Shown here: positions 1 to 63,406 of the stretch, one piece after another | Numbering within the stretch: the stretch's first letter is position 1 | How the letters are laid out: every line of letters starts with the position of its first letter | IMG/VR virus record: IMGVR_UViG_3300030294_000005 | Coordinates: 1 to 64,000 of that record | Length of the DNA: 64,000 nt | Reading direction: 5' to 3' (one strand) | The notes under the pieces: generated by a model | The model's input: only the letters and a program-made list of their open reading frames with translations | What the model was told of the DNA's origin: nothing | Database searches by the model: none | Made by a program: the position numbers and the translations under genes

Positions 1-110
1 GCCCCTCAACCTATCTATCTGGTAAGGATGCGGTTAAAAAATATAAAGATGATGGATATATAGAAAAAGATAATAAGAAAGTTATAAGATTTGTAGAAGA
101 TCCTAAATAA
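1..110 (+). CDS. 3' end of an upstream gene (partial), ending ...KKVIRFVEDPK*
   Basis: Open frame from position 3 to TAA at 108-110. Confidence 0.6.
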   Translation, partial: PSTYLSGKDAVKKYKDDGYIEKDNKKVIRFVEDPK

Positions 111-127
111 CAATGAAGGTGAATTAA

Positions 128-955
128 TTGGATAAAGAAGTAGAATATTCGATATATGGAGATTGGGAAATGATAGAGCGTAATTCTGGAATTAAAAAAT
201 TTAATTCCATACTGGCTACTTATAAATGTAAAAGATGTGGGAATCTAAAAAATATGATTCCCTCTCAACTAATTCATTATAGAGTTGTTTGTGAAACTTG
301 TAAAAATAAATTCTATAAAAATCATTATATAGGAATGACATTTGGTAAATTAAAAATAGTAGAATATTTGGGTTTGAAAGATAAATATTATTATTATAAA
401 TGTATATGTTCTTGTAAAACAGATATATCGGATAGGGAATTTAGACTTTCTAATCTATTAAATGGCAATAGTGAATCATGTGGATGCGAACAAAATAAAC
501 AAACTCATGGATTAACAAATACTAGAATATATAAAATATATAGAGGAATGATAAGAAGATGTTATAATTTAAATGAAAGTAACTATGATAGATATGGTGG
601 TAGAGGAATATTTATTTGTGATGAATGGCTAATAGAAGAGAATGATCAAGGTCTTAAGAACTTTTATAATTGGTCTATTAGGAATGGATATAATGAAGAT
701 CTATCTATAGATAGAATTGATAATGATGGCCCATATGCACCATGGAATTGTAGGTGGACTACTGATAATGTACAAGCAAATAATACTAGTACAAATCATA
801 TTATAAATATTAATGGATATGATTATACTATATCACAGATTGCTTATAGATATTCTATAGAGTATAACTGGTTGTCAAATAAAATAAACAAAGGAATATC
901 TATAAATGAAATTATAAAAGATAAAAAAGAAAAACCTATACGTTTTATTGAATAA
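128..955 (+). CDS. Free-standing HNH-type homing endonuclease with N-terminal Cys-rich domains
   Basis: CKRC/CETC and KCICSC motifs, then HGLTNTRIY..GM..RCY, YGGRGI and SIDRIDNDGPY.PWNCRW...QANN (beta-beta-alpha-Me signature); paralogue at 62501. Confidence 0.8.
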   Translation: MDKEVEYSIYGDWEMIERNSGIKKFNSILATYKCKRCGNLKNMIPSQLIHYRVVCETCKNKFYKNHYIGMTFGKLKIVEYLGLKDKYYYYKCICSCKTDISDREFRLSNLLNGNSESCGCEQNKQTHGLTNTRIYKIYRGMIRRCYNLNESNYDRYGGRGIFICDEWLIEENDQGLKNFYNWSIRNGYNEDLSIDRIDNDGPYAPWNCRWTTDNVQANNTSTNHIININGYDYTISQIAYRYSIEYNWLSNKINKGISINEIIKDKKEKPIRFIE

Positions 956-975
956 AAATAGTAGAGGGTGATATT

Positions 976-1380
976 ATGGAATTTTTAATTATAGATGATG
1001 ATAATAGCAAGATAGAAAAAGTATCTAAATATATGGGCAGTAATACTTTATATGCTGCCCGTTCTTTTAATAGTGCATTACAAACTATATATGCCAGTAT
1101 ATGTACTAACATATATGATGGGGTTATATTAGATATGTCATTTCCTAGATTTGATAATGAACCATGGACTATAAAAAGTAATATGGGACTTCAAATACTA
1201 CATAGAATGAAGCATCGTAAAATAGATATTCCAGTATTAATATACTCATCTGAAAATAATAATGATACAAGTGAGTATAAAAATGTAAAAGGGTTTGTAT
1301 GCAATGATAATCATTGTATAGAGAAAGAGATTCTAGATTTTATTGATATATGCAATAAGATTAAAGAAAATAAATCATAA
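976..1380 (+). CDS. Stand-alone response-regulator receiver (CheY-like) domain
   Basis: FLIIDDD acidic pocket, VILDMSFP phospho-acceptor Asp, GLQIL helix, IPVLIYSS strand. Confidence 0.8.
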   Translation: MEFLIIDDDNSKIEKVSKYMGSNTLYAARSFNSALQTIYASICTNIYDGVILDMSFPRFDNEPWTIKSNMGLQILHRMKHRKIDIPVLIYSSENNNDTSEYKNVKGFVCNDNHCIEKEILDFIDICNKIKENKS

Positions 1381-1412
1381 CTGCATTATATTATATCAAA
1401 AGGAGTAAACTA

Positions 1413-1748
1413 ATGATTGAAGTTGGCAAAAAAGTAGTAATAAGAGATGCAATGGATAATAGCTTAATTGGTAAACCAGGAATTGTACAAGAGATGAGTG
1501 GAGGAGATAGTAGTAGTGGTCGTATTACATGTTGTAGATTAGAAATTGATGGTAAAAAAGGCTCATGGCTAAATGCATGGTCATTAGATAGTATTGAAGA
1601 AGTACTTGAAGTTAAAAACACATTATTCAATACATTTAGTTATGATGAAAGTAGGAGCACTGCTAAAAAACTTAGATATAAATATTTTGAGTTTAATGGA
1701 AATATTTATAATGTAGAGGATACTGAAATGAAAAGAATATTTAAATAA
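1413..1748 (+). CDS. Hypothetical protein
   Basis: ORF with AAGGAG RBS. Confidence 0.6.
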   Translation: MIEVGKKVVIRDAMDNSLIGKPGIVQEMSGGDSSSGRITCCRLEIDGKKGSWLNAWSLDSIEEVLEVKNTLFNTFSYDESRSTAKKLRYKYFEFNGNIYNVEDTEMKRIFK

Positions 1749-1771
1749 TAAATTAGCATACAAGTTAATAC

Positions 1772-1987
1772 TTGTATGCTAGAATATCTTTAAAGGAAGT
1801 GATATCAATGACTATTGGAATAAAAATAATGATATGTATAATAGCTTTACTACTTACTATAATAATGAAACGTGGAACACCAGCAAAAATTATGAGATAT
1901 GATATAATAGCATTTGTAATAATTTTTATAATTTATTTAATTATAATAGGGGTATTAGATATGGGTATATTTACCAAACTTGTTTAA
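1772..1987 (+). CDS. Small two-TM membrane protein (likely start ATG 1808)
   Basis: Two hydrophobic stretches; AGGAAG RBS before 1808. Confidence 0.55.
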   Translation: MYARISLKEVISMTIGIKIMICIIALLLTIIMKRGTPAKIMRYDIIAFVIIFIIYLIIIGVLDMGIFTKLV

Positions 1988-1999
1988 TCTAATTATTAT

Positions 2000-2020
2000 A
2001 ATTATATATTATAAATATGA
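2000..2020 (+). promoter_or_regulatory. Early (virion-RNAP type) promoter
   Basis: AATTATATATTATAAATATGA matches a consensus recurring upstream of about 17 accessory operons. Confidence 0.6.
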
Positions 2021-2052
2021 GTAATAAAAAAATTAAAGAAAGGTTGTAGTGA

Positions 2053-2514
2053 ATGAAAAATAAATCAACACTAATTTTAGTTATATCATTTCTTATATTC
2101 TTCTTTACACCGTTATCTAATAATTTTATATTTACTATTAGTATTACTCAATGGTTTTGTGTTTTATTCATATATTTTAAAATAAATAAAAGAGAGGCTG
2201 TACAAATGAAAGATAAAGCAATAACAATTTTAATTATTTCATCTATTATATTTTTATTAAGCATTGCTGGTAGTCATTATGTATTTGCTATTGGAGTAAC
2301 CCAGTGGGTTATTGTATTAGTTATAATTATGATATCAAAATTACATTGGTATCCATTAGATTTAATGAAGTTCAATGATACTAAATTAGATAAGGCATTA
2401 AAAGAACGAAAATATTTATCAGTTTTTGCTTATGCAATGTCTATGCCAGCTGTTGCTATAGGAGTTATATGGGTAGTAGTATTGGTTGTAATGGTTTGGT
2501 TTATTCAATTTTAA
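2053..2514 (+). CDS. Multi-pass membrane protein with an internal tandem duplication
   Basis: Two similar ~50 aa hydrophobic modules, each containing TQW. Confidence 0.6.
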   Translation: MKNKSTLILVISFLIFFFTPLSNNFIFTISITQWFCVLFIYFKINKREAVQMKDKAITILIISSIIFLLSIAGSHYVFAIGVTQWVIVLVIIMISKLHWYPLDLMKFNDTKLDKALKERKYLSVFAYAMSMPAVAIGVIWVVVLVVMVWFIQF

Positions 2515-2536
2515 AGATAAAAGGAGATGTTTTTTA

Positions 2537-2914: not shown

Positions 2915-2922
2915 AATATAAA

Positions 2923-2958: not shown

Positions 2959-2959
2959 A

Positions 2960-3781
2960 TTAAAAATTCTTATCGCAATAATTCATTATCTCATTCTGAA
3001 TATGAGATTCAAGATTTATAACTAAAATAGAACCATTCTTATCTACAAGTTGAACTCTTCTTCCTTTATCAACAATACCTATTGATTCATATAAAAGTTC
3101 AAACGATTCTAATACATTATTAAGATTACCTGATTCCATTTTTATATAATCAATAACTGATTGATTAGTTATAGGAATTATAAGTCCTGGATCATTATTT
3201 TGTAGTAATACGTTAGTACCGCTTATACCAGCAGATTCACTAACTACTTTTGTCATATATGCAGATTCATGTGATGGATAAATTACTCTATCCCATGTTA
3301 TGATTTTTATGTTCTTTACTTCAGCACCTCTACCTGTATTTTGTATAGTACCTAAAGCTCGTAATGACCATGATGGGAATTCTCCATCCATTATGTCATC
3401 ATTAAAATCTCTACCTAAATCATTATTACAGCCTCTAACATGAGCCATTATGTTGTTGCCATCAACCCATAATTTTAAGATCTTAGAACATGTATTATTA
3501 GGATCAATTGTTTGTTGTCGTCCTATATCTTTAAGCATTGGATGCCCATTTTCATTTTTCATATTACCTGTTTTTATTAATTCAAGAATTCTTGGACTTT
3601 TAGTTTCTGGTATTAATTCTTCTCCAGCATAGAATCTTCCATTTCTATTTTTTTTATTAATATCTTGTAATATTACTTCTACTGTTAATTTATCACTTTT
3701 ATCTCCAATGATAGTTGCTTCTTTTCTTTCAGAGGCAGCAGTTTCATTTATAATAAATCCTATTTTACTATCTAACATCAT
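2960..3781 (-). CDS. Prohead (core) protease, T4 gp21-like
   Basis: NRNGRFY, GHP (His), SWSLRALG (Ser) and WDRVIYPS motifs typical of gp21/S77 head-maturation proteases. Confidence 0.85.
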   Translation of the reverse strand: MMLDSKIGFIINETAASERKEATIIGDKSDKLTVEVILQDINKKNRNGRFYAGEELIPETKSPRILELIKTGNMKNENGHPMLKDIGRQQTIDPNNTCSKILKLWVDGNNIMAHVRGCNNDLGRDFNDDIMDGEFPSWSLRALGTIQNTGRGAEVKNIKIITWDRVIYPSHESAYMTKVVSESAGISGTNVLLQNNDPGLIIPITNQSVIDYIKMESGNLNNVLESFELLYESIGIVDKGRRVQLVDKNGSILVINLESHIQNEIMNYCDKNF

Positions 3782-3801
3782 ATACCTCCCTTTTACTTAT
3801 T

Positions 3802-3813
3802 TACTATGATGTT
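3802..3813 (-). promoter_or_regulatory. Late promoter AACA-N6-TA (protease)
   Basis: AACA-TCATAG-TA just upstream of the RBS. Confidence 0.6.
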
Positions 3814-3847
3814 ATTTTGATAAGAATTGTAAAAGCATATATTTTCA

Positions 3848-3925
3848 ACTATATACTATAAATATGAATAAAAGTTTAATAGTATCTTTTGTTTAAAAAA
3901 ATATAAACTATTTAATTTAAGGAGG
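3848..3925 (+). promoter_or_regulatory. Early promoter plus conserved structured 5' leader
   Basis: TATATACTATAAATATGAATAA, then an AATAGT...ACTATT stem ending before GGAGG. Confidence 0.5.
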
Positions 3926-3934
3926 ATTATTAAT

Positions 3935-4003
3935 ATGAAAAAAGTATCAATTCTTATTAAAAATATTCAGGAACCTAGAAAAAGAAGATGTGGAACAAAA
4001 TGA
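3935..4003 (+). CDS. 22-aa basic leader ORF (MKKVSILIKNIQEPRKRRCGTK)
   Basis: Uses the strong GGAGG RBS; its TGA lies 2 nt before ATG 4006. Confidence 0.4.
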   Translation: MKKVSILIKNIQEPRKRRCGTK

Positions 4004-4323
4004 AAATGCAAATTGAGTTATCAGAGATAGAAGAGTTTGCTAGAAACAAGATGCTCTTTGATGCTGGTAAAGTAATAAACAAAGACATAATGAATATGTT
4101 TATGGATATTACTAATAAATGTACTCAATATAGTTTTGGTAAAATATCTATTACTGAAGAATCTATTATTGTAGATATTGATCCAAAATGTTTTACTGAA
4201 TTTTTTGAATTACTAAATAAATTTCTAGTATTAATATTACCATCTGTTGAATATGGTATGGAACTAGGGGATATGGTAATAGAATCGATGCAATTATTTA
4301 ATAAAAAATGGGGAGGAAAATAA
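3988..4323 (+). CDS. Hypothetical protein, tandem paralogue 1 (likely start 4006)
   Basis: Shares a G.I(S/T)....KCF..F..(L/I)L......W pattern with the next ORF. Confidence 0.6.
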   Translation: MWNKMKMQIELSEIEEFARNKMLFDAGKVINKDIMNMFMDITNKCTQYSFGKISITEESIIVDIDPKCFTEFFELLNKFLVLILPSVEYGMELGDMVIESMQLFNKKWGGK

Positions 4324-4325
4324 TA

Positions 4326-4694
4326 ATGAGAATTAAAATTGACATGACAATTAAAGAGAGGGAGCATTTATTTAAATTATGTAGTTTGTTAAAAATTAAG
4401 ATGGCTCCTACTAAAGGAAAGTGGGGATGTATAACTCCAAGTTATGCATTTGTTGAAGAAAAATGTTTTATTGATTTTATAAAAATCCTAACAGCAATGG
4501 CACCTAAGATTATTAGTTTGTTTGACTTTGTATCAGCATTGCTTCCAATAATCAAAGATGCTTTTACTAAATTTGGTAATACATGGTATACTGATACTAC
4601 AAGTGTATCAGCAGTTGAATTTGATCAATATCAAACTGAATCAAATCCTGAAGATAAAAAACAAAGTAAGGATAAAGATAAAAAGAAATCTTAA
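4326..4694 (+). CDS. Hypothetical protein, tandem paralogue 2
   Basis: GGAGG RBS before ATG 4326; similar to the previous ORF. Confidence 0.6.
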   Translation: MRIKIDMTIKEREHLFKLCSLLKIKMAPTKGKWGCITPSYAFVEEKCFIDFIKILTAMAPKIISLFDFVSALLPIIKDAFTKFGNTWYTDTTSVSAVEFDQYQTESNPEDKKQSKDKDKKKS

Positions 4695-4751
4695 TAAAAA
4701 AGAGATAAACTAGTCATTGCTAGTTTATTTTTTATTTTTTATATATCTTCC

Positions 4752-4763
4752 AACATTATAATA
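4752..4763 (+). promoter_or_regulatory. Late promoter AACA-N6-TA (helicase)
   Basis: AACA-TTATAA-TA. Confidence 0.55.
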
Positions 4764-4784
4764 ATTAGAAAGAGGTGAGTTTAT

Positions 4785-6362
4785 ATGCCAAGAATTATAG
4801 TTAAACATTCTTCTATAGTATTAGAAGATTATAAATTGGGAGATTGCCAGAAATTAGAAAATTATTTTATGATATATAATCCTGTTACTCATGATTATGA
4901 ATATAGAGGATTAGATTATTCTGAAGAAGAAAATAGATTAATAATACCAAGAGGAATAGATGTTAATTTTATAGAGAAGTTAGTTGGAGTTACTGCAACT
5001 CTAGATACAAAATATGATGACTTTACTTATACGGATCAAACTATGATAAAGTTTCTTCCTAGAGATGCTACACAAAAACAAGCATTAAGATTTACATTAG
5101 GTGAAGGAGAATATAAGACTAATAAATTAAAGTCTCAATTATGTTTAAATCTTTCAACTGGTAAAGGAAAATCATATGTTGCTATAATGACATTGGCCTA
5201 TTCATCTATGAGAGGCATTGTTATAGCATCATCTCTAAATGTACTTCAACAATGGAAGAATTATATATTAGAATATACGGATATATCTGCTAAACAAATA
5301 TTTTTACTATCAGGAGTTGGTAGTATATTTAGTTTATTAAGAAAAGATATTTCTACTTATAAAATTATATTAGCATCGCATAATACAATAAAATCATATG
5401 GTGATACATATGGCTGGGATAAAGTTGGAGAATTATTTAAGTTTATGAAGATAGGAATTAAGTTTTATGATGAAGCACATCTTAATTTTGATAATATATA
5501 TAAGATAGATTATCATACTAATACTAAATATACTATGTATATAACAGCTACTCCAGCTAGGAGTAGTAAAGAACAAAATTTTATATATCAACTATACTTT
5601 AGAAATGTTCCATCAATAAATTTATTTGATGAAGATGAAGATCCACATACTAAATACATTGCTATAAAATATAATAGTCATCCATCTCCAAGAGATTTAA
5701 GTACATGTAAAAATCAATATGGTTTAGATAGGAATAAGTATGTAGGATATATTATTCAAAATGAAAATTATTATAAAATGCTTCATATAATATTAGAATT
5801 AGCATTGAAGCACGATGGAAAAAATCTATTTTATATAGGTACAAATAATGGTATAAAAATTACTAAAGCTTGGATCATAGAAAATTATCCAGAGTTAGAA
5901 CCTATGATAGGAGTTTATACTAGTGATGATTCTTTACGTAATCCTAGTGAAACAAAAGATCAACAATTAGATAAAAAGATAATATTATCAACTACAAAGT
6001 CATGTGGTACGGCTATGGATATAAAAGGCTTAAAAATGACTGTAGTACTAGCTGAACCATTCAAATCTGAAGTCTTAGCAAAGCAAACTTTAGGTAGAAC
6101 TAGAGACAGAGATACATTCTATATAGAAATAGTAGATGCAGGATTCTATCATATTAATAAATATTATAATCAGAAAAAAGATATATTTACAAAATATGCA
6201 ACGGAATGTTCTGATATATTTATGAGTGATGCTGAATTAGATAGTAAGGTTGCTAATATACTTAATAAGAGAACATTAGCTAGATTGAGAGGTTTAAGAG
6301 TTTCTCCTATAAGATTCCTTGAAGATGAAGAAAAAATAAGAGTAATTAAATTTGTAATATAA
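4785..6362 (+). CDS. SF2 DNA helicase (UvsW-like)
   Basis: Walker A STGKGKS, DEAH, TATP (motif III), QTLGRTR (motif VI). Confidence 0.9.
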   Translation: MPRIIVKHSSIVLEDYKLGDCQKLENYFMIYNPVTHDYEYRGLDYSEEENRLIIPRGIDVNFIEKLVGVTATLDTKYDDFTYTDQTMIKFLPRDATQKQALRFTLGEGEYKTNKLKSQLCLNLSTGKGKSYVAIMTLAYSSMRGIVIASSLNVLQQWKNYILEYTDISAKQIFLLSGVGSIFSLLRKDISTYKIILASHNTIKSYGDTYGWDKVGELFKFMKIGIKFYDEAHLNFDNIYKIDYHTNTKYTMYITATPARSSKEQNFIYQLYFRNVPSINLFDEDEDPHTKYIAIKYNSHPSPRDLSTCKNQYGLDRNKYVGYIIQNENYYKMLHIILELALKHDGKNLFYIGTNNGIKITKAWIIENYPELEPMIGVYTSDDSLRNPSETKDQQLDKKIILSTTKSCGTAMDIKGLKMTVVLAEPFKSEVLAKQTLGRTRDRDTFYIEIVDAGFYHINKYYNQKKDIFTKYATECSDIFMSDAELDSKVANILNKRTLARLRGLRVSPIRFLEDEEKIRVIKFVI

Positions 6363-6896: not shown

Positions 6897-7664
6897 ATGG
6901 AGGTCATAAAATTTATGCATCAGCAATATGAGAAGATATCCGATGATGTATATTATATAGGAAATAATGCGGTTTTAAAATTTAATGTATCATTGGCTCA
7001 TAAAGCAGAAGATGGTACTAGATATCCATATCATAAGGAATATGAATATTCATCAAGCAAGTATTCAAATATAGATTACAATCTAGTAACTATGAAAAGG
7101 AACTTTGATTATTTTATTTCTATAGAAAATGCAAAAAAAACAGATAGCAATGATAAAGAATATATTATGATACGTATAGAAGATATGTATTATGTACTTA
7201 ATCAATTAAAAATGGCATATAGATGGTTTACGGATAAAGAGTTTATTAACTTGTATAAATATGATGATAAGAAGAAAATGATAATATTTAATAGACCAGA
7301 TTCTATATGTATAAGTAATTTAGCTATGGATAAATATATTAAACTGGACCCTATAGTATTAGAATATTCTAATGGAGTTCAACAGGGTGGAATAAGAATG
7401 ACATTATCTAATGAAGGTAATTATGTAGATATTGGTATTCCAAAATTTGAAGGATTATTATATACATTAAGTACATTTAATATGTATGAGTGTGCTCAGA
7501 ATGTTATTAATTATCTTCAAAGACCTGAGTTAGGTACAAACTCTTATAAATTTAATAATGCTCAAGACACATCTAATAGTGGATATGTTGAAGGTGGAAA
7601 CAATAGACAAATAAAAGCTAATTCAAAGGGTAAATCATTCTTTGATAAAATGGATGAAATATAA
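6897..7664 (+). CDS. Conserved jumbo-phage hypothetical protein
   Basis: ORF with AGGAGG RBS; globular composition. Confidence 0.65.
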   Translation: MEVIKFMHQQYEKISDDVYYIGNNAVLKFNVSLAHKAEDGTRYPYHKEYEYSSSKYSNIDYNLVTMKRNFDYFISIENAKKTDSNDKEYIMIRIEDMYYVLNQLKMAYRWFTDKEFINLYKYDDKKKMIIFNRPDSICISNLAMDKYIKLDPIVLEYSNGVQQGGIRMTLSNEGNYVDIGIPKFEGLLYTLSTFNMYECAQNVINYLQRPELGTNSYKFNNAQDTSNSGYVEGGNNRQIKANSKGKSFFDKMDEI

Positions 7665-19137: not shown

Positions 19138-19911
19138 ATGGCTTTAGGAAATTATAATAATAATAGTAATGAGAAGAAAAATTATTCACCAACGGTATAT
19201 TCATCGTATGGTATGGGTAATCCAGAATCGACTGTAGATGCAAGTTTATTTTCAGCATCGTTTTGGAACAATATGATAAAGTTATCAATATCACCAAGAA
19301 AAAAAACAGATGATACTACTGTTAAATACGATACTGATAATGCTATAGCAATTTACTTAGCACATACAAAAGCTAATATATTTTATCAAGAAATTTGCAA
19401 ATTCCAAGAAAATCCAGATTTGTATGAGAATCAAGGAGTTGCATCTGGAGAAGGCTTAATATCAATTTCTAATGGAAAAGAATATGGAATTAATTGCCCA
19501 TGTATTATAATTAGAAAGATTGATGGAGAAACTGGAGCTTGTAAAAGTTCTTATGCATATCAGATAAAACAAGATTATCATTATGGTATAAGAAACTTTG
19601 ATCAGAAAACAAATGACTTTGATAAAGTGTTTTATAATAGTATAGAAATTGAAGAATTAAAAATATTATTGAAAACTTATTATGAATCAATGTCAGGAGC
19701 TGCTGCATACTCAGTTATAGATAATTTGAAGTATGATTTCTCAAGAGTTAATACTAAACTGGAACTCATTGGAGATAAAGTTGGAGTTGATTTTACTAGA
19801 AAAGGTGGAAATGCTGGTAATGGTAAATCATCATCTTCAATATTCAATACTAAAGAACCAAGAAACTTCTCATCATCTACATTGAATGATATAGAAGATC
19901 AGATAAACTAA
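19138..19911 (+). CDS. Conserved hypothetical protein (possible ssDNA-binding protein)
   Basis: Flexible G/S/N-rich and acidic C-terminal tail; AACT-N6-TA upstream; function is a guess. Confidence 0.35.
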   Translation: MALGNYNNNSNEKKNYSPTVYSSYGMGNPESTVDASLFSASFWNNMIKLSISPRKKTDDTTVKYDTDNAIAIYLAHTKANIFYQEICKFQENPDLYENQGVASGEGLISISNGKEYGINCPCIIIRKIDGETGACKSSYAYQIKQDYHYGIRNFDQKTNDFDKVFYNSIEIEELKILLKTYYESMSGAAAYSVIDNLKYDFSRVNTKLELIGDKVGVDFTRKGGNAGNGKSSSSIFNTKEPRNFSSSTLNDIEDQIN

Positions 19912-23680: not shown

Positions 23681-24607
23681 ATGAAAATTATTAAGTTTGT
23701 AGAAAGGGAATTCGTTACTGTAGATGATTGGGTTCCTGAGCCAGAGGATAAGATTTTTAGACACACTAAAGATTTTGTTATTTTACCAGTATCTAAGTAT
23801 TATAATATAGATAATGATGCATTAGATTATTTTAATATTTCTAAGAAAAGATGTTATAATGAGTATAAGATGAGAGAGCATATAACCCATTATATAAATT
23901 ATTTTCTAAAATTTTATGATACTCAACAAGAACTATTCTATATATATTCTAATTTAAAGTATTTAATAAGTTTAGATGAGTATGATAAGAAAGCATTCTT
24001 TTATGATTTAGACAAATATGTATTCTCATTGTCTATGAAAATAAAGATAAATCAAATGAATAGAGATAATTATTCTCTATCTCTTAAATATAAAAATAAG
24101 AAAGATCCATGTCTACAGTATACAAACAAACATGGATATATAATGATGGAAATGAGTTTGATGATGAATTTAATAATTCCATTGCTTACTCATTTTATAT
24201 ATACTAAAAAAATTAATGATTCTAATAAATTTTTATTAGAAGCGTTTGATTTAATTATAAGCAAATTTGGAATGGACTTATACAGTAAACTATATGAAAC
24301 ATCACTTACTAATATAAATAAGAATAAAGATAAAAATCCAATATGGAATAAACAAGATATCAGAGGTATAAATACAACCACACATGCAATTGATTCTGTA
24401 GAAAATATTATTTTACAAATAATGCCAAAATATGAATATTGCCAAAATATAATAGTATTTAATTATCAGGCAATAAAAAATAATATAGGATATAGAGTTA
24501 CTACAAGTGGTTATGAATTTACATTTATTCCATTGTCATCATCTAAGAGGGATGAGGATATGAATAGTGAATTTGATAAATTTGAATCCTATTTAACTAA
24601 GGCGGAT
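23681..24607 (+). CDS. Exon 1 of probable non-virion RNAP promoter-specificity (sigma-like, AR9 gp226/phiKZ gp68-type) subunit
   Basis: Splicing 24607^25197 gives ...YLTKAD|ESLYLQNK..., 495 aa; size and position two genes from the chaperonin match AR9 (gp226/gp228). Confidence 0.6.
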
Positions 24608-25196
24608 TTTAAGTAGTCCCATTAATGTAGTAACACATTAATGAAAACTCTTTGAATTGCTGGAATACTCTAATAGCTTAATTAACTACAACGTGATCTG
24701 TAAAGATGAGCGTGAATGTGATCGAAAGATAGAAAAAATAATTAAGATGAGGTATGATGATAGTAAATCTAACCCTTGATAACAATGAGTAACCGTAGCA
24801 GCGAAGTATATTTAATAATACATCCATATAGTAAATTTAATATCTAAAAGGAATAAAAATATGATAGCAATAAAAAATAGAGCTAGATTTACTGCTATAT
24901 CTAAAGATTATAATTTTTAATATTATTAAATATAAACGTTCAACGACTATCGAAAACTAATATACTAGTAAAGTCTAGTTAAAAATAAGGTATAGAAATA
25001 TACACGAAGTGAGTAGAGTACAGCCCAAGTGGGTAGATGCATTTTAGCCAATATAAGACATCTTTAAATGGAAGTGAAGAGTATCCTACTTATATATTAA
25101 ATATAAGGGATAATGATATAGTCTAGTCTTCTAGGGAAATCCTAGAGAAGTTCATAAGAGAACTGCATTAGAGTTGCGATCTAGTGTGAATATTCG
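24608..25196 (+). ncRNA. Group I intron, 589 nt, no endonuclease ORF
   Basis: 5' U.G P1 (GGAT/GTCC); P GAATTGCTGGAA 24654; Q TAGCAGCGAAG 24796; R GTTCAACGACTA 24938; S GATATAGTCT 25115; terminal G 25196 restores the frame. Confidence 0.9.
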
Positions 25197-25757
25197 GAAA
25201 GTCTGTATTTACAAAATAAAGTAAATTGTCAAGAAACAATGAATAAGATAACTAATCATTTTGGCCCATTTGATCAAAAAGAAATAGATTTCTATATGGG
25301 ACAATTAACACAAGATGGAAAAACAATAATAAATGATTTCCAAAAGAATTTAATATTTAATCTATTCTATAAATATTTTGGAGACTCTGTTAGTATAAAA
25401 GCTATTAATAAAGAAGACTATGTTAAATTAATGATAACAGCTAAAAGAATTTTATCATCTAATAATATGGTAATATTACCCTATATAGTCAGCGGTAGAG
25501 TTAATAGACTTCCACAAAGAAAAAATATAAATAAAAAAGAATTAAATAAAATACAGAGTTCGCCATATTTTGATTACATTACTAAGAAATATAACAATCC
25601 TAAGATAGAGAAGTATATATTCTCTGTGATAGCAACGATATTGGTATCTGATTTTCAAATAATTGATTATTATGATAAAGAACTTAATGGTAAGCATATA
25701 GAAATGATACCAGATATAGTATGTGAAGAAATTCTTATGTATATAATGAGTATATAG
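25197..25757 (+). CDS. Exon 2 of the sigma-like RNAP subunit
   Basis: In frame from GAA 25197 through ATG 25239 to stop. Confidence 0.8.
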   Translation, partial: ESLYLQNKVNCQETMNKITNHFGPFDQKEIDFYMGQLTQDGKTIINDFQKNLIFNLFYKYFGDSVSIKAINKEDYVKLMITAKRILSSNNMVILPYIVSGRVNRLPQRKNINKKELNKIQSSPYFDYITKKYNNPKIEKYIFSVIATILVSDFQIIDYYDKELNGKHIEMIPDIVCEEILMYIMSI

Positions 25758-26397: not shown

Positions 26398-26700
26398 ATG
26401 GATATAGTAATAAAATTTAATGATAAAAAAATAGGGGTTAAAGATGTAATACAAGTTAAACCTGAGGAAATAGAAGAGTTATTAACTAAAATAATAGATG
26501 AGTTGGTAACTGAATATACAAAAGGCGATTACGAAATACATGATTTATTAAATTCAATATGTATTAATGATCTATCTATATCTGATGTAACTACTATTTA
26601 TGCTAGATTATATCATATAATAGAAAGTGATACAATTTTAAGAAAATATTGTGAAGGAGGATATGTAAACGTAGCTACTAATACTATATATCCTAGATAA
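26398..26700 (+). CDS. Hypothetical protein
   Basis: AGGAGG RBS. Confidence 0.6.
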   Translation: MDIVIKFNDKKIGVKDVIQVKPEEIEELLTKIIDELVTEYTKGDYEIHDLLNSICINDLSISDVTTIYARLYHIIESDTILRKYCEGGYVNVATNTIYPR

Positions 26701-31331: not shown

Positions 31332-32621
31332 TATTTAACGCCCTTATTCTGGATGCTGAGCACTTATATTTTTATATAAGATTGGACTATATTATACCTT
31401 TCGGCCCGCCTCTTTCGATTTAAAGGATTTAATACCTACCACAAAGTGGCCCTACTCTACTCACTTCAGAAGTGTATCCACCTCTTAATTTTAACTAGAA
31501 GTATTACTAGTATATCAGCTTTCGATAGTCTCTGAACCTTCTACCAATTATAATCTTTAGATATATCGAGATAAGCATCTCTTCGTCGTATTCGTCCTAT
31601 GAATCCACGACATTGTTCATAAGTTCCAGGTAAATTTAATTCACGTATTATCTCACCAGTTCTTTTACCATCTTGCAATAATTTACATACTCCAATAATA
31701 TATTCATCATAATTCATAAACTTTTTAGCAGAAGGGATATTATATAAGCATGATATTGATTGCCACCTTAAACCTTGAGCTATATGACTTACAATAAATC
31801 TATTATTTTCATTAACCTCTAATCCAGCTATTTCAAGTGTATTTCCATAATTAAATCCATCTTCTAATGCTTTGCATATAAAATGAATTTGTTTATTTGT
31901 TAATCTTGACATACCATTATCTTCACCAGCAGTAATTTCACCATGGCTCCAATTATGATTATTTATATATGGAGTGCTATAATCTATTTCTCTTGCTCCA
32001 TTTTCTATGGCATGATCTACATTTTCTTGTGGTGTAATCCATTCAAGATTTTCAATTCTATTATTGAATTTACATAGATCCTTATGATTAACAAATATTT
32101 TATTTTCTGGATCTGAATTTATTATAAACATTATTGCAACTAATACATGAATTCTATATGTAGATCTTGTATTATTATTGTTCATTAATTGTGTTGATAA
32201 ATAAGTATCTACAATAGTTGATAATAGTTTACCTGATTTCTTATTCATAATTTTACCGAAATTACTTATTTGATATAAATCATGTTTTATATTTAAACAT
32301 TCTAAATCTACCCAAATAACTTCATTTTCAAATGTTATCGGTCTATACATAATTAATCACCTCTTAATGTATAGTTACTTGATCGGTAGACTAGTATTAT
32401 AATTGATAGCTTGGCTGCTGATTATCCATTGTTTATAAGGGTTAGGAATGTTTCACCATACCTCATCTTAATTATTTTTCTTATCTTTCGATTACATTCA
32501 CGCCTATCCATTACAGATTACGTTGTAGTATAATTAAGTTTTAGAGTATTCCAGCAGTTTAAGCGGTTTTTGTTTTAGGGAATTTCGCCCAAGGTAGACT
32601 ACAATGTATAAGATTAGGTTC
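31332..32621 (-). ncRNA. Group I intron (1290 nt) in the RNAP catalytic motif, carrying an HNH gene
   Basis: P1 GACTAT/GTAGTC with U.G; P AACTGCTGGAA 32559-32549; Q AATCAGCAGCCAAG 32423-32410; R GTTCAGAGACTA 31537-31526; S AATATAGTCC 31393-31384. Confidence 0.9.
31541..32350 (-). CDS. Intron-encoded NUMOD4-HNH homing endonuclease (I-HmuI-like)
   Basis: YQISNFGKI, IHVLVA..F and VNHKD..K.NN...NLEW.T..EN..HA; lies between intron Q and R elements. Confidence 0.9.
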   Translation of the reverse strand: MYRPITFENEVIWVDLECLNIKHDLYQISNFGKIMNKKSGKLLSTIVDTYLSTQLMNNNNTRSTYRIHVLVAIMFIINSDPENKIFVNHKDLCKFNNRIENLEWITPQENVDHAIENGAREIDYSTPYINNHNWSHGEITAGEDNGMSRLTNKQIHFICKALEDGFNYGNTLEIAGLEVNENNRFIVSHIAQGLRWQSISCLYNIPSAKKFMNYDEYIIGVCKLLQDGKRTGEIIRELNLPGTYEQCRGFIGRIRRRDAYLDISKDYNW

Positions 32622-57189: not shown

Positions 57190-57711
57190 ATGATATTAAC
57201 AGGAATGCAAATTAAAAAAGAAATAGAGGCTGGTAATATATTTATATCAGACTTTGATGAAAAAAGATTAGGTCCTAATTCATACAATTTAAGATTATAT
57301 AATAAGCTAATGATATATGCAAATGACGTATTAGATATGAAAAGAAAAAATAACTGTATAGAACTAACAATACCAAAAGAAGGACTTATATTAGAACCTG
57401 GAGAATTATATCTAGGTAAGACAATAGAATATACTGAATGTGGTAATTTTGTTCCAATGATTGAAGGCAGATCTAGTGTAGCTAGATTGGGTCTTAAGGT
57501 CCATTTAACTGCAGGATTCGGCGATATAGGAAATAAACTTTCATGGACATTAGAGTTAGAAGCTACTAAACGTATTAGAATATATCCTGATGTAGAGGTA
57601 TGTCAGATATATTATAATACAGTTATGGGAGATACCTCAATACGATATGATGGTAAGTATCAAAATGGTAAAGAAATAGAACCTAGTAAACTATATAAAG
57701 ATTTTGAATAA
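57190..57711 (+). CDS. dcd: dCTP deaminase
   Basis: MILT...I, PNSYNLRL, EGRSSVARLG, AGFGD.G and WTLEL motifs of the trimeric dCTP deaminase family. Confidence 0.9.
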   Translation: MILTGMQIKKEIEAGNIFISDFDEKRLGPNSYNLRLYNKLMIYANDVLDMKRKNNCIELTIPKEGLILEPGELYLGKTIEYTECGNFVPMIEGRSSVARLGLKVHLTAGFGDIGNKLSWTLELEATKRIRIYPDVEVCQIYYNTVMGDTSIRYDGKYQNGKEIEPSKLYKDFE

Positions 57712-59755: not shown

Positions 59756-59775
59756 AAATTAAGGAGATATGTAAA

Positions 59776-60492: not shown

Positions 60493-60506
60493 GGGAGATA
60501 TGTAAA

Positions 60507-61226: not shown

Positions 61227-61235
61227 AAATGTAAT

Positions 61236-61484
61236 ATGCTCTCAGTAATGATTAAAAATTATAAAGATATTATTAAAAATGAAAATAATATAAACTCTGA
61301 CGAATCTAGTGGTGAGCAAGGGACCTATTCTGTAAGTAATAAAATAGAACCTGATACTAATTATATTAGTAAAAAAGATTTTATTAATACATCAATTAAT
61401 CTTAAACCTGCACAAGATCCTAATCATGGTATTTACAAAGGTGATAAATTTTTAGAACCAGATAAGAATAATAAAAAAGAATAG
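61236..61484 (+). CDS. Hypothetical protein, possible remnant of a family B C-terminus
   Basis: NYISK.....INLK resembles SYISK.....TNLK of copy 5. Confidence 0.4.
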   Translation: MLSVMIKNYKDIIKNENNINSDESSGEQGTYSVSNKIEPDTNYISKKDFINTSINLKPAQDPNHGIYKGDKFLEPDKNNKKE

Positions 61485-61508
61485 TTTGTACCATTTTACT
61501 TTTATTTA

Positions 61509-61520
61509 AACATATCTATA
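61509..61520 (+). promoter_or_regulatory. Late promoter AACA-N6-TA
   Basis: AACA-TATCTA-TA. Confidence 0.55.
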
Positions 61521-61535
61521 ATAATATAGATAGGA

Positions 61536-62462
61536 GTGATTAATGTGAAAATAACTTTAGGTGACAAATATTATAAAGCAGATGAAGAAGGTAATATAGA
61601 AATAATAAGAGTTCAAAAAATAAAAACAGGTTCGATTATTGTATTGGATGATAAAAAAGAAAGACATTCTATATCAGAAATTGAGCTTGATGATTATACA
61701 AGATTAAAACCAGATGCATATATAACTTTTAGTATTGTAACTTTGGAACAAAATATGAGAGATATTATTGTTAGTATGCATAGAAGAAAAGATATTGATG
61801 AGGGTATTGAAGCACCATATGCCGCTTGTAGACAAAATATATTAGATATATTTGCAAATCAAATTGTTAAAAATGATACGTATTATATTGGATGTAGTAT
61901 GAGTAAAGATACATGTCCTTCTGATGTTGATTTTGGTATTATCATTGCCTGTAATTCTATACATAAAATGTATATGGTTTCAGCATATATAGATGATAGA
62001 TTAACTGATTGGTTGGATATTGTACCTTCAAAACAATTTGATACTGTTCTTGTAAATATTTTTGGAAACATAGCTAATGCTAATTTACAAGGATATTCTA
62101 AAACTTTAAAAGAGTTATTAGAAGTTAATTGCTTTATGTATGATTTTCATAAAGGATTTAATATAGATCAAGTTCCATTTAATATAAAATATAACGAAGA
62201 TACATTTGAATTAGACTTTAAACAAACTAAATACTTAGAAGACTTATATAAAGTTGAAATAAGTAGAACGTATGTTGCTAAGTTTACTAAAGAAATAAGT
62301 TTATCAAAAATAAAAAGATATTATGTTTTAATAAATGATATGAATGATAATTTATTTGTAATAGCTTATGATATGGGTAAGTATATAAATAGAACGTTCA
62401 AAGAAAATTTAGTTAATAAAAAAGATTTGGTTGAACTCTTAAAATATAAAATGAGAAAATAG
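61536..62462 (+). CDS. Conserved hypothetical protein
   Basis: AGGAG RBS; late promoter. Confidence 0.6.
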   Translation: MINVKITLGDKYYKADEEGNIEIIRVQKIKTGSIIVLDDKKERHSISEIELDDYTRLKPDAYITFSIVTLEQNMRDIIVSMHRRKDIDEGIEAPYAACRQNILDIFANQIVKNDTYYIGCSMSKDTCPSDVDFGIIIACNSIHKMYMVSAYIDDRLTDWLDIVPSKQFDTVLVNIFGNIANANLQGYSKTLKELLEVNCFMYDFHKGFNIDQVPFNIKYNEDTFELDFKQTKYLEDLYKVEISRTYVAKFTKEISLSKIKRYYVLINDMNDNLFVIAYDMGKYINRTFKENLVNKKDLVELLKYKMRK

Positions 62463-62500
62463 ATTAATGAGTATATTATTATATTAGGAGGTGATTATTA

Positions 62501-63406
62501 ATGAGTAGACAAGTGGTTATTGACTACGATGATGATAAAAAATGCAGAAGAGGTATATATGGAGAATGGGAATTAATAAAAGAATATTGTAATGATAGAG
62601 CTAATGATGGTTCTATATTATCTAAATACAAATGTAAAATATGTAATAATATTATATTTGTAACTAAGCATAGAATGGATAAATCAAGACATGTATGCAA
62701 AATATGTACTGAAAATTATTATAAATATAACTTTATAGGAAAAACATATAATAGATTAACTATTATAAAGTATGCATATACTGATAAAGATAGTAATCAT
62801 TATTATTATTGTAAATGCTCATGTAATAATCTAATGCTAGAAACTCCAATTAGATTATCTCATTTAAAAGATGAAGATATACAATCATGTGGATGTATAA
62901 GATTAGAAAAGATTAAAGAAAAATTAACAACACATGGATTATCTAATACTAGATTATATAGTATATATGATGCAATGATACGAAGATGCTATGATATTAA
63001 TAATCCAAATTATTATAGATATGGGAAAAGAGGAATTTATGTATGTAATGAATGGTTAGAAGATGATGGATTAAATAATTTTTATAATTGGGCTATTGAA
63101 AATGGCTATAGAGATGACTTGACTATAGATAGAATGGATAATGATGAAATATATGCTCCTTGGAATTGTAGATGGGCAACAAAGATTGAACAAGCAAATA
63201 ATAGAAGTAGTTGCACTTCTATAAATATAATGGGAACCAATTATACTAAAACCGAAATTTCTAGAAAATATAGTATAAATAAATATATATTAAATAAGCA
63301 TATTAATAATGGTGAGCGAATAGAAGATTTAGTAAATGCTATATGTAAATTAAAAATACCTATATCAATTAATACTAAACAAAAAGTTATCAGTTTTTAC
63401 AAGTAA
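62501..63406 (+). CDS. Free-standing HNH-type homing endonuclease
   Basis: HGLSNTRLY, TIDRMDN..IYAPWNCRWAT..EQANN; paralogue of 128-955. Confidence 0.8.
   Translation: MSRQVVIDYDDDKKCRRGIYGEWELIKEYCNDRANDGSILSKYKCKICNNIIFVTKHRMDKSRHVCKICTENYYKYNFIGKTYNRLTIIKYAYTDKDSNHYYYCKCSCNNLMLETPIRLSHLKDEDIQSCGCIRLEKIKEKLTTHGLSNTRLYSIYDAMIRRCYDINNPNYYRYGKRGIYVCNEWLEDDGLNNFYNWAIENGYRDDLTIDRMDNDEIYAPWNCRWATKIEQANNRSSCTSINIMGTNYTKTEISRKYSINKYILNKHINNGERIEDLVNAICKLKIPISINTKQKVISFYK

What the first reader, a model, noticed from the sequence alone, without database searches (positions are those of the whole stretch)
81..63406. Short [VPI]-I-[RKST]-F-x motif recurring at the termini of DNA-acting proteins: candidate docking or localisation tag
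Seen: the motif lies at or near a terminus of eight unrelated proteins. C-termini: the partial gene (VIRFVE, 81-98), HNH 128-955 (PIRFIE*), the helicase twice (PIRFLE...VIKFVI*), and HNH 62501 (VISFYK*). N-termini: 6897 (MEVIKFM), the sigma-like subunit (MKIIKFVE), the intron HNH (MYRPITFE), and 63580 (EPIKFD, residues ~27-32). I did not see it at the termini of structural, WG or membrane proteins. The motif sits in tails outside the catalytic folds. Inference: a linear peptide that docks nucleic-acid enzymes, including selfish homing endonucleases that appear to have acquired it, on a shared partner such as a clamp/SSB-like hub, a replication-compartment import factor or the phage chaperonin. 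I know of no description of such a tag.
Basis: partly seen in the sequence, partly recalled or inferred. Interest (0 to 1): 0.72.

Follow-up and report, generated by a model that had tools for sequence, protein, structure and literature searches.

The report
Lineage-coded docking tag, phage DNA enzymes
An uncultured jumbo phage puts the same 4-6 residue peptide at the very ends of its DNA polymerase, helicases, ligase, methylase, late RNA polymerase and even its selfish endonucleases, and related phages carry a different peptide at the same positions, which points to an undiscovered, co-evolving hub protein in a phage group reported to lack a sliding clamp.

Summary
In the 236-kb genome, [VPI]-I-[RKST]-F occurs 40 times (14.7 expected). 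21 lie within 10 residues of a terminus, against 1.4±1.2 in shuffles. The unseen 172 kb replicates this (p=3e-7). Substituted or reversed control motifs, other reading frames and antisense show nothing.

Carriers are PolB, a divergent PolB, DnaB-like and ResIII helicases, RNase H, NAD-ligase, Dam, the non-virion RNA polymerase β and β′ subunits plus an RNAP-like subunit, and all five HNH endonucleases. Structural, metabolic, topoisomerase, UvsX, Dda and terminase proteins lack it.

The key result is that related uncultured phages have other motifs at orthologous positions: FM.R (ranked first in a blind scan, p=8e-14), K[IV]W, PM.F, GM.Y, AF. Each is enriched at termini only in its own genome. 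Homing endonucleases use the resident variant. AR9 and phiR1-37 lack the system.

This proteome-wide covariation implies one co-evolving, phage-encoded partner. It works like clamp- or SSB-docking motifs, but no clamp, clamp loader or classical SSB is detectable. I found a cryptic Whirly-fold SSB-like protein (19138-19911) as one hub candidate. The single complex prediction gave no answer, so the hub is unidentified.

The parts
81..92 (+). VIRF tag, 9 residues from the C-terminus of the non-virion RNAP beta-prime subunit (gene 234093-236159 of the genome; its 3' end is repeated at the window start)
   Evidence: Beta-prime identity (Madawaska 'non-viral RNA polymerase beta-prime subunit'; phrog_3015). 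Orthologues are tagged at 694/707 (G002), 699/706 (G004) and 721/744 (G005).
935..946 (+). PIRF tag at residues 270-273 of 275, HNH endonuclease 128-955
   Evidence: The phrog_374 match ends at residue 269, so the tag lies just outside the fold.
6306..6353 (+). Two tags (PIRF 508-511, VIKF 520-523 of 525) in the C-terminal tail of the ResIII/DEAD helicase 4785-6362
   Evidence: The AR9 orthologue alignment ends at residue 472. Orthologues are tagged at 505/546, 510+530/536 and 498/509 with lineage-specific variants.
6903..6914 (+). VIKF tag at residues 3-6 of protein 6897-7664 (unknown function; its C-terminus ends in an acidic SSB-tip-like SFFDKMDEI)
   Evidence: (Shine-Dalgarno present). Orthologues in G002, G004 and G005 lack an N-terminal tag, so this one is G000-specific.
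23687..23698 (+).
   Evidence: It resembles phiR1-37 g245 'RNA polymerase' and AR9 194414-195808. Orthologues are tagged at the N-terminus in G002 (8/512), G004 (10/510; corrected start MKKFMTRE) and G005 (11/312).
26407..26418 (+).
   Evidence: No Pfam or PHROG family.
32330..32341 (-). PITF tag at residues 4-7 of the HNH_3/NUMOD4 endonuclease 31541-32350(-)
   Evidence: The G004 orthologue starts MKSFMIRD and the G005 orthologue MYSPIEF.
63386..63397 (+). VISF tag at residues 296-299 of 301, HNH endonuclease 62501-63406
   Evidence: the phrog_374 match ends at residue 281.
63661..63672 (+). PIKF at residues 28-31 of protein 63580-64311, after a low-complexity N-terminus; a weak or uncertain instance
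   Evidence: no family. It is not in the reciprocal-best-hit core, so conservation could not be checked.
19138..19911 (+). Untagged core gene for a Whirly/PC4-fold single-stranded nucleic-acid-binding protein with a disordered Gly/Ser/Asn linker and an acidic C-terminal tip; candidate hub (unproven)
   Evidence: AF2 model with pLDDT 77.7, about 90 in the core, topology beta4-alpha-beta4-alpha. Foldseek hits MRP1/MRP2, WHY1-3, PBF-2 and Pur-alpha at probability 1.00. Tail conservation. Present in all four tag-bearing genomes and absent from AR9, phiR1-37 and all cultured phages.

Best explanation
The motif is a short linear docking peptide. Its general register is phi0-PHI1-x-PSI3, spelled K-x-K-[VIP]-I-[SKR]-F-[VLI]-[EDN] in this phage. 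It sits at the extreme N-terminus (residues 2-5), at the C-terminus, or repeated two to five times in disordered tails.

It is read by one phage-encoded partner that co-evolves with it. The tag recruits the enzymes that work on replicating phage DNA: PolB, a divergent PolB, the DnaB-like and ResIII helicases, RNase H, NAD-ligase, an SbcD-like protein, Dam methylase, the non-virion (late) RNA polymerase through three subunits, and homing endonucleases. They are recruited to a common DNA-associated hub.

Functionally this is the equivalent of clamp-binding (PIP-box, beta-clamp motif, T4 gp45 tails) or SSB-centred 'toolbelt' networks, in a phage group reported to lack a classical sliding clamp. 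Multi-copy tails on the RNA polymerase beta subunit and PolB would give avid binding to an oligomeric or DNA-coating hub and could couple late transcription to replication.

What is shown: the tag, its terminal position, the client list, its lineage-specific recoding at orthologous sites, and its absence from AR9 and phiR1-37. What is inferred: binding to a single partner, that the partner is phage-encoded and DNA-associated, and the recruitment function. The hub is not identified. The Whirly-fold SSB-like protein 19138-19911 is one candidate among about a dozen clade-specific core proteins.
For: Terminal enrichment that is specific and replicated on unseen data. Peptide-level signal. Tags lie outside conserved folds, and one lies in a region modelled as disordered.

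The client list is restricted to replication, repair, modification and non-virion transcription. Topoisomerase II, SbcC, UvsX, Dda, exonuclease, terminase, RNAP beta-type fragments encoded beside virion genes, dCTP deaminase, a ThyA-like enzyme and structural proteins are untagged.

Covariation: beta-tail repeats predict the same phage's PolB-tail motif (diagonal sum 7 against a permutation mean of 1.0, p=0.0012; p=0.0028 without G000 and its close relative), with a further M-C lineage. A blind scan of about 21,000 patterns in G004 ranks FM.R first (23 of 41 terminal, 23 proteins, p=8e-14). The ligase carries copies near residues 110 and 145 in all four genomes with four different spellings. 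At least 13 core proteins are tagged at orthologous positions. In the cross-genome matrix each motif is terminal-enriched only in its own genome, for example 22/40 against 0/17, 2/14, 1/8, 0/12 and 2/16.

Mobile HNH paralogues use the resident spelling: G000 5 of 5, G004 4 of 4. The diversity of spellings argues for a fast-evolving phage partner, not a conserved host pocket. The literature states that this phage group lacks a classical clamp (PMC7824862).
Against: No binding has been shown. The only complex prediction (SSB-like + UvsX-like + helicase tail) scored 0.00, which the tool classes as no answer. No clamp, clamp loader or classical SSB family is detectable, so the hub is hypothetical.

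About 32-34 carriers per genome, roughly 11% of the proteome, many of them small unknown proteins, is a large client set for a phage clamp and would also fit a sorting signal. A DnaB-type helicase is not a typical clamp client. Statistical support is weaker in G002 (K[IV]W 6 of 18, p=2e-3) and G005 (PM.F 4 of 12, p=1e-2), and some clients lack a recognisable tag in some lineages. Gene calls are my own greedy ORF set, not a curated annotation.
Confidence: 0.58

Rival explanations
1. Localisation or import signal. The tag is an address label read by a receptor or gate that admits proteins into a phage-built replication compartment (nucleus-like or condensate), not a replisome toolbelt motif.
For: Terminal position, a large client set of about 11% of the proteome including many small unknowns, and selfish endonucleases obliged to carry the local code all resemble sorting signals. 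A tubulin-family gene is present at genome 178554-179756 and in G004.
Against: Topoisomerase II, UvsX, Dda helicase, exonuclease and SbcC are untagged in all four lineages, although they also need access to DNA; piggy-backing is possible. The tubulin gene is absent from the complete genome G002 and from G005, which both have the tag system. No chimallin homologue was found, but that search was insensitive. The review states that AR9-like phages lack chimallin and that chimallivirus import does not use terminal signals (PMC13282480). Three separate subunits of one RNA polymerase are tagged, which is more than import would require.
Confidence: 0.16
2. Homotypic 'sticker'. The tags bind each other as short beta-strands. 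Multivalent carriers (RNAP beta, PolB) would scaffold a replication/transcription condensate and monovalent carriers would partition into it, with no dedicated hub.
For: Alternating hydrophobic pattern; two to five copies in beta and PolB tails but single copies elsewhere; no hub found.
Against: Self-association of 4-residue motifs flanked by lysines is not expected to be strong or specific. Invariant anchors such as F-M-x-R in 41 of 41 cases look like pocket recognition. There is no direct evidence.
Confidence: 0.07
3. Degron. The tag is recognised by a protease or adaptor (host ClpXP/Lon type or phage-encoded) to time the removal of replication and transcription proteins.
For: Known degrons are short, terminal and often basic plus hydrophobic. 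The strict terminal position (residues 2-5, or the last 10 or so residues) fits.
Against: Copies conserved at internal positions of the ligase N-terminal extension and arrays of three to five copies in tails are not typical of degrons. Destabilising the whole replisome and the late RNA polymerase has no obvious logic. Host protease pockets are conserved, whereas the motif is recoded between lineages.
Confidence: 0.06
4. Host beta-clamp (DnaN) binding motif. The phage lacks its own clamp and hijacks the host's.
For: The client list (polymerase, ligase, RNase H, methylase, helicases) and terminal position match bacterial clamp-binding motifs. No phage clamp is detectable.
Against: The spellings do not fit QL[SD]LF, and they differ radically between related phages (I-x-F, FM.R, [IV]W, GM.Y, AF), whereas to my knowledge the beta-clamp pocket is highly conserved across bacteria. 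The hosts are unknown, so this could not be tested directly.
Confidence: 0.04
5. Artefact: compositional bias of an AT-rich proteome, N-terminal MKK-type bias, shared ancestry of paralogues, or a DNA signal at gene boundaries.
For: Ile, Lys and Phe are abundant. KII and K.KK are generally enriched at termini. Some carriers are paralogues.
Against: Shuffles, seven control motifs, held-out genes, off-frame and antisense controls, and C-termini alone all reject it. Unrelated protein families carry the tag, and a compositionally different motif (FM.R) behaves the same way in another genome.
Confidence: 0.02

Closest known systems
Sliding-clamp docking motifs: the PIP-box (QxxLxxFF) on PCNA clients, the bacterial beta-clamp motif (QL[SD]LF), and the C-terminal tails of T4 gp43, gp33 and gp55 that bind gp45
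   Same: A short linear peptide at N- or C-termini or in disordered tails. The clients are polymerase, flap nuclease/RNase H, ligase, DNA methyltransferase, helicases and nucleases. As in T4, transcription components (gp33, gp55) use the same docking mode, which parallels the tagged non-virion RNAP subunits here.
   Different: The consensus is unrelated. No PCNA, beta or gp45-type clamp and no clamp loader is detectable, and the literature says this phage group lacks one. The motif is recoded between related phages, which is not known for clamp motifs. DnaB-type helicase and homing endonucleases are clients. There are up to five copies per tail.
SSB-centred interaction hubs (E. coli SSB C-terminal tip DDDIPF; T4 gp32; T7 gp2.5)
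   Same: One DNA-bound protein organises many replication and repair enzymes. A cryptic SSB-like protein with a disordered linker and an acidic tip is encoded here.
   Different: In known systems the linear motif is on the SSB and the pocket is on each client. Here the shared motif is on the clients. The SSB-like protein has a Whirly/PC4 fold, not an OB fold. No interaction has been shown.
Protein import into the chimallivirus phage nucleus (Imp1/PicA system)
   Same: Selective admission of replication and transcription enzymes in jumbo phages with split multisubunit RNA polymerases.
   Different: According to the review (PMC13282480), import there depends on surface patches, not terminal signals. 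No chimallin was detected here (low sensitivity), and several DNA enzymes are untagged.
Lineage-specific sorting signals with a dedicated reader (LPXTG/sortase, PEP-CTERM/exosortase, T9SS C-terminal domains)
   Same: A proteome-wide terminal tag whose spelling varies between lineages together with its cognate recognition protein. It is discoverable by the same kind of terminal-enrichment and phyletic logic.
   Different: Those are secretion or cell-surface signals on exported proteins of cells. This is a cytoplasmic tag on nucleic-acid enzymes of a virus, it occurs at either terminus, and it can be repeated.
BRC / FxxA motifs binding RecA-family recombinases
   Same: Repeated short aromatic motifs that dock onto a DNA-bound oligomer. 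An untagged UvsX-like recombinase is encoded immediately upstream of the multi-tag RNAP beta gene.
   Different: The spacing of the anchors differs (i, i+2 instead of i, i+3). The client spectrum is far broader. The complex prediction that included UvsX gave no answer.

Membership tests
Sliding-clamp-binding motif network (PIP-box / beta-clamp motif / T4 gp45 tails) | Short linear motif at termini or in disordered tails of replication and repair proteins | tested here: met
Sliding-clamp-binding motif network (PIP-box / beta-clamp motif / T4 gp45 tails) | Motif matches a known clamp-binding consensus (QxxLxxFF, QL[SD]LF, or the T4-type tail, which I recall as (S)LDFL) | tested here: not met
   The logos are K-x-K-[VIP]-I-[SKR]-F-[VLI]-[EDN] (G000) and K-x-F-M-x-R-[DVE] (G004). 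Only a loose h-x-F-h resemblance to the T4 tail (consensus quoted from memory).
Sliding-clamp-binding motif network (PIP-box / beta-clamp motif / T4 gp45 tails) | A ring clamp (PCNA, beta or gp45 fold) and an AAA+ clamp loader encoded by the phage or supplied by the host | tested here: not met
   PF09116, PF00712, PF00705 and PF13177 give no match in six frames of the genome. The literature agrees for this phage group. A clamp of novel sequence cannot be excluded, because only two proteins were modelled.
Sliding-clamp-binding motif network (PIP-box / beta-clamp motif / T4 gp45 tails) | Physical binding of the motif to the clamp's hydrophobic pocket | not testable with these tools
   There is no clamp candidate, and only one complex job was available (no answer).
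SSB-centred hub | A single-stranded DNA-binding protein with a disordered linker and a conserved acidic tip | tested here: met
   19138-19911 has a Whirly/PC4 fold, a linker at 216-248 and a tip S[ST]LDDIE. ssDNA binding itself is inferred from the fold.
SSB-centred hub | Clients bind the SSB | tested here: inconclusive
   Complex prediction scored 0.00, 'no answer'. Phyletic co-occurrence with the tag system is compatible, but 15 other genes share that profile.
Chimallivirus nucleus import | Chimallin (ChmA) shell protein encoded | tested here: inconclusive
   phmmer and tblastn with phiKZ gp054 find nothing in G000, G002, G004 or G005, but the PhuZ control also missed the tubulin-like gene.
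Chimallivirus nucleus import | Cargo selection by surface patches, not terminal linear signals | tested here: not met
   Here the shared feature is a terminal linear peptide. The statement about chimalliviruses comes from PMC13282480.
Whirly / PC4-like fold (for 19138-19911) | beta4-alpha-linker-beta4-alpha topology and structural similarity to Whirly, MRP and Pur-alpha proteins | tested here: met
   DSSP elements E20-74/H76-91 and E98-165/H169-185. Foldseek E=4e-5 to 1e-2, probability 0.99-1.00, TM by target 0.45-0.62. Topology definition from PMC7549692.

The most novel reading that the evidence does not exclude
A whole clade of uncultured AR9-related jumbo phages runs its replisome and late transcription through a previously unknown hub protein that replaces the sliding clamp. 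The hub reads a 4-residue 'address code' that is rewritten across about 30 proteins whenever the hub's pocket drifts. The code would then also act as a compatibility barrier: incoming genes, including homing endonucleases, only work once they acquire the resident spelling. The multi-copy tail on the non-virion RNA polymerase would couple late transcription to replication, like the T4 gp45 mobile enhancer but built from unrelated parts.
Probability: 0.35. Interest if true: 0.9.

Novelty: new variant of a known kind. Interest (0 to 1): 0.82.

Why it matters
Jumbo phages with split multisubunit RNA polymerases are reported to lack a sliding clamp, and how their replisome and late transcription are organised is an open question. 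A shared docking tag gives a direct way in. It supplies a ready-made client list (including about ten proteins of unknown function), a peptide bait for finding the hub, and natural specificity swaps (I-x-F, FM.R, [IV]W, GM.Y, AF) for testing it. Recoding of a linear motif across the whole proteome, at orthologous sites in some 13 or more proteins, is a rare and clean example of network-wide co-evolution. The finding that selfish endonucleases must adopt the local code suggests a new kind of barrier to gene flow between phages. The method is generic: a blind terminal k-mer scan, plus prediction of the motif from tail repeats. It could be run on any large virus genome.

Tried and rejected
(1) Looking for the same motif in relatives. 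Pooled ORFs from about 90 related loci show no terminal enrichment of [VPI]I[RKST]F (11 of 103). This first looked like a refutation, until the tails showed lineage-specific substitutes.

(2) DNA-level signal at gene boundaries: rejected.

(3) Pfam searches of the genome for gp45 clamp, beta-clamp, PCNA, clamp loader, SSB and gp32: no matches.

(4) Complex prediction with the SSB-like protein, the UvsX-like recombinase and the helicase tail 498-525: score 0.00, no answer, not evidence either way.

(5) Other hub candidates. 189816-190412 and 166552-167373 have poor Atlas models and no informative neighbours. 122146-122799 has only three homologues. 199275-200210 was modelled as a disordered N-terminus with an AT-hook-like stretch, a helical hairpin and a small beta domain; it is not clamp-like and is itself a client. 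Pfam and PHROG scans of other clade-specific core proteins were uninformative.

(6) Profile search of the SSB-like family against PDB sequences: nothing. Only the fold search worked.

(7) Chimallin search with phiKZ gp054: nothing, but insensitive.

(8) Cultured relatives. AR9 and phiR1-37 lack the tails and any blind terminal motif. No cultured phage has the SSB-like protein.

(9) Apparent broken beta genes in L026, L027 and L039 suggested another genetic code, but there are no in-frame stops. It was an artefact of my ORF picker.

(10) Column-wise covariation to find the hub pocket: judged under-powered with four to six lineages and not run.

Full report
**Context.** The window is the first 64 kb of a 236,184-bp, 25.9% GC virus contig. 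The contig's first 135 nt repeat its last 135 nt with one mismatch, so the genome is circular or terminally redundant. The major capsid protein, PolB and the RNA polymerase subunits place it as a distant relative, at 21-33% identity, of the jumbo phages AR9/PBS1, Staphylococcus S6-like phages and Yersinia phiR1-37, which have split multisubunit RNA polymerases. There is no close cultured relative. IMG/VR holds many uncultured relatives at 37-76% identity.

**Checking the observation.** I called 288 genes by a simple greedy longest-ORF method, covering 93% of the genome.
- [VPI]-I-[RKST]-F occurs 40 times in 34 proteins, against 14.7 expected from composition.
- 21 of the 40 lie within 10 residues of a terminus, where 8.8% of positions lie (p=1.6e-12).
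- 1000 within-protein shuffles give 14.7±3.8 total and 1.4±1.2 terminal hits, never more than 27 and 6.
- The motif was defined after the fact on the window, so the rest of the genome is the fair test. It gives 12 of 26 terminal, p=3.2e-7.
- C-termini alone, which do not depend on start-codon choice, give 11 of 40 against 4.4% (p=8e-7).
- The reversed motif and seven single-position substitutions show no terminal enrichment.
- The signal is in the peptide. Codons vary synonymously. Near gene ends there are 22 of 40 in-frame hits but 0 of 20 off-frame sense hits and 12 of 109 antisense hits.
- N-terminally tagged genes have Shine-Dalgarno sequences. Where the longest ORF lacked one, an internal ATG with a good site puts the tag at residues 2-5.

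Two of the HNH genes are paralogues. 26398-26700 was missed. The hit at 2080-2091 sits in a hydrophobic segment and is probably chance.

**Who carries it.** The carriers are:
- PolB 200347-202275, and a second, 'divergent family B' polymerase 231695-233425;
- a polymerase-like protein 191078-192826;
- a DnaB-like helicase, with spelling AIRF;
- the ResIII helicase, two copies;
- RNase H;
- NAD-ligase, two copies in an N-terminal extension;
- Dam methyltransferase;
- an N-terminally tagged 395-aa protein upstream of DnaB, whose AR9 homologue begins with a metallophosphatase-like DIHFG motif (my reading of the output);
- all five HNH endonucleases;
- about ten small proteins of unknown function.

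The tags lie outside the folds, because family profiles and orthologue alignments stop before them. In the one modelled client, the tag lies in a region of about 75 residues predicted to be disordered.

Untagged in all lineages examined: both topoisomerase II subunits, SbcC-like, UvsX-like, Dda-like helicase, an exonuclease, the large terminase, RNAP beta-type fragments encoded beside virion genes (probably virion RNAP), dCTP deaminase, a thymidylate-synthase-like enzyme, the protease and the structural proteins.

**The decisive result: lineage-specific recoding.** Pooled over relatives, the G000 spelling is not terminal-enriched. The tails are nevertheless there, and each lineage repeats its own short motif in them:
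- PI.F and PM.F;
- GM.Y;
- K[IV]W;
- [KRN]AF;
- FM.R;
- LFHK;
- [KR]PF[IV];
- [VIE]M[CA].

I defined each phage's motif only from repeats inside its RNAP beta tail. That motif recurs in the PolB tail of the same phage and almost never in another phage's (diagonal sum 7 against a permutation mean of 1.0; p=0.0012, and p=0.0028 without G000 and its 76% relative).

I then fetched three further genomes in full and ran a blind scan of all gapped and ungapped 3-residue patterns for terminal enrichment.
- In G004 (264 kb, complete) the top pattern of about 21,000 is FM.R. 23 of 41 occurrences are terminal, in 23 proteins, p=8e-14, which is about 2e-9 after Bonferroni correction. This is exactly the spelling predicted from that phage's beta tail.
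- The predicted K[IV]W in G002 (6 of 18, p=2e-3) and PM.F in G005 (4 of 12, p=1e-2) are weaker but point the same way.
- In a cross-genome matrix each spelling is abundant and terminal only in its own genome. [VPI]I[RKST]F gives 22/40 in G000 against 0/17, 2/14, 1/8, 0/12 and 2/16 elsewhere. FM.R gives 23/41 in G004 against 0/3, 0/0, 0/2, 0/3 and 2/7.

Among 76 reciprocal-best-hit core genes, at least 13 carry the tag at orthologous positions in two to four lineages. The clearest case is the ligase, with copies near residues 110 and 145 in all four genomes, spelled VIRF/PITF, FMVR/FMKR, KVW/KIW and PMVF.

Aligning these sites gives one register, phi0-PHI1-x-PSI3. PHI1 is a large hydrophobic residue (I, M, W or F) and PSI3 is F/Y, R/K or polar. 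Lysines usually lie upstream and an acidic residue downstream. Homing endonuclease paralogues follow the resident code: G000 5 of 5, G004 4 of 4 beginning M-x-x-FM.R, G005 1 of 2. AR9 and phiR1-37 have no such tails, no ligase extension and no blind terminal motif.

**Interpretation.** Concerted change of a short peptide across many unrelated proteins is most simply explained if all of them are read by one partner whose binding site drifts. The variety of spellings argues for a fast-evolving, phage-encoded partner and against a conserved host pocket such as that of the beta-clamp.

The client list is the classical toolbelt: polymerase, flap nuclease, ligase, methyltransferase, helicases and nucleases. 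As in T4, where gp33 and gp55 dock on gp45, the late transcription apparatus is included. Several DNA enzymes are untagged, which fits a replisome-type hub better than a general entry pass to DNA.

No clamp, clamp loader, SSB or gp32 family is detectable, and the literature states that this phage group lacks a classical clamp (PMC7824862). So the hub would be new, or at least unrecognised.

**Search for the hub.** Because AR9 and phiR1-37 lack the system, I filtered for genes that are core in the four tag-bearing genomes and have no BLAST-level homologue in those two phages. This left 16 genes.

It matches MRP1/MRP2, plant Whirly proteins, PBF-2 and Pur-alpha by Foldseek (probability 1.00). 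This is the Whirly/PC4-like family of single-stranded nucleic-acid binders (review PMC7549692). It also has a disordered Gly/Ser/Asn linker and a conserved acidic tip. It is therefore a cryptic SSB-like protein and a plausible hub.

However, its tail motifs are conserved, not recoded, so if it is the hub the tags must bind its core. The other candidates were uninformative. The PolB-adjacent protein 199275-200210 is a client with an AT-hook-like stretch, not a clamp.

**Rivals.** An import or localisation signal remains the main alternative.
- For it: the carrier set is large and a tubulin-family gene exists.
- Against it: that gene is missing from two genomes that have the tag system. No chimallin was detected, though the search was insensitive. 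Several DNA enzymes are untagged. Import in chimalliviruses is reported not to use terminal signals.

A homotypic sticker, a degron and host beta-clamp binding are less likely, for the reasons given under the rival explanations. A statistical artefact is excluded by the controls.

**Novelty.** Full-text searches for a comparable tag in jumbo phages, or for clamp-binding motifs on homing endonucleases, found nothing. The principle of a shared docking peptide on replisome proteins is known. The motif family, its proteome-wide recoding between lineages, the inclusion of the phage RNA polymerase and selfish endonucleases, and the absence of any recognisable hub are new.

**Caveats.** Binding is inferred, not shown. 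Gene calls are not curated. Two of the four lineages have modest statistics. The hosts are unknown. The clade has no cultured member.

Noticed in passing
window 19138-19911 (+): Core gene in the capsid-gene neighbourhood that encodes a Whirly/PC4-fold single-stranded nucleic-acid-binding protein, with a disordered linker and an acidic tip (S[ST]LDDIE). It is a cryptic SSB in a phage with no Pfam-detectable SSB, and no homologue was found in any cultured phage.
   Followed up: yes
window 19138-19911, residues 230-240 of the protein (alignment A1): Inside the disordered linker of the SSB-like protein, an S-x-F-[ND] element is conserved across 68 homologues (F236 invariant, S234 nearly so). This is a second linear motif. 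It is conserved, not lineage-coded.
   Followed up: no
window 6897-7664 (+), C-terminus: This N-terminally tagged protein ends in SFFDKMDEI (G002 SFFDKMDDM, G004 DIFDTIDQM), which resembles the acidic tip of the SSB-like protein. It may compete for the same tip-binding partner.
   Followed up: no
genome 178554-179756 (+) = L177:1489-2691: A 400-aa ORF with a tubulin-family match (PF00091, E=3.9e-7, below the gathering score). There is a 38% identical orthologue in G004 (111443-112633) but none in G002, G005, AR9 or phiR1-37.
   Followed up: partly
window 1-135 and genome 236050-236184: The first 135 nt of the contig repeat the last 135 nt with a single A/G mismatch. This suggests a circular or terminally redundant genome assembled from a mixed population. 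IMG/VR classes the record as linear with no end repeats.
   Followed up: yes
genome 199275-200210 (-) = L147:3275-4210: A PolB-adjacent, divergently transcribed core gene, in the same arrangement as phiR1-37 g169/g170. It has a disordered N-terminus with a conserved AT-hook-like KKKRGRPRK, a long helical hairpin and a small C-terminal beta domain. It may be the small beta-domain polymerase partner mentioned by Iyer et al. (PMC7824862).
   Followed up: partly
window 23681-24616 and 25239-25757: The RNAP-like subunit is 311 aa in G000 and 312 aa in G005 but about 510 aa in G002 and G004. The gene may be split in G000, with a gap of about 620 bp before the next ORF.
   Followed up: no
AR9 (NC_031039.1) 3583-5268, in L150: The AR9 DnaB-like helicase ends in ...KDSGIPF, which resembles the bacterial SSB C-terminal tip (D-D-D-I-P-F). 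It may be a mimic of the host SSB tail.
   Followed up: no
window 57190-57711; genome 106760-107986 (-): dCTP deaminase and a thymidylate-synthase-like gene are core in the tag-bearing clade but have no BLAST-level homologue in AR9 or phiR1-37. The clade's DNA base chemistry may differ from the deoxyuridine DNA of AR9/PBS1.
   Followed up: no
G004:C1:93448-95115 (L099): the genome search reports one in-frame TGA inside the DnaB-like helicase match of G004. It could be a sequencing error, a read-through site or an intron boundary. My own ORF call (93454-95235) is an open 593-aa frame, matching the 593-aa open frame that call reports.
   Followed up: no
protein P0011 (homologue of window 19138-19911): A 57% identical homologue is deposited in a MAG labelled Peptostreptococcaceae bacterium. 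This is the only host hint seen, and it is compatible with the 26% GC genome.
   Followed up: no
genome 113448-114224 and 126885-127556 (-): Two paralogues of phrog_12252 (unknown function). One is C-terminally tagged in three lineages and the other is untagged in all four, a natural tagged/untagged pair for experiments.
   Followed up: partly
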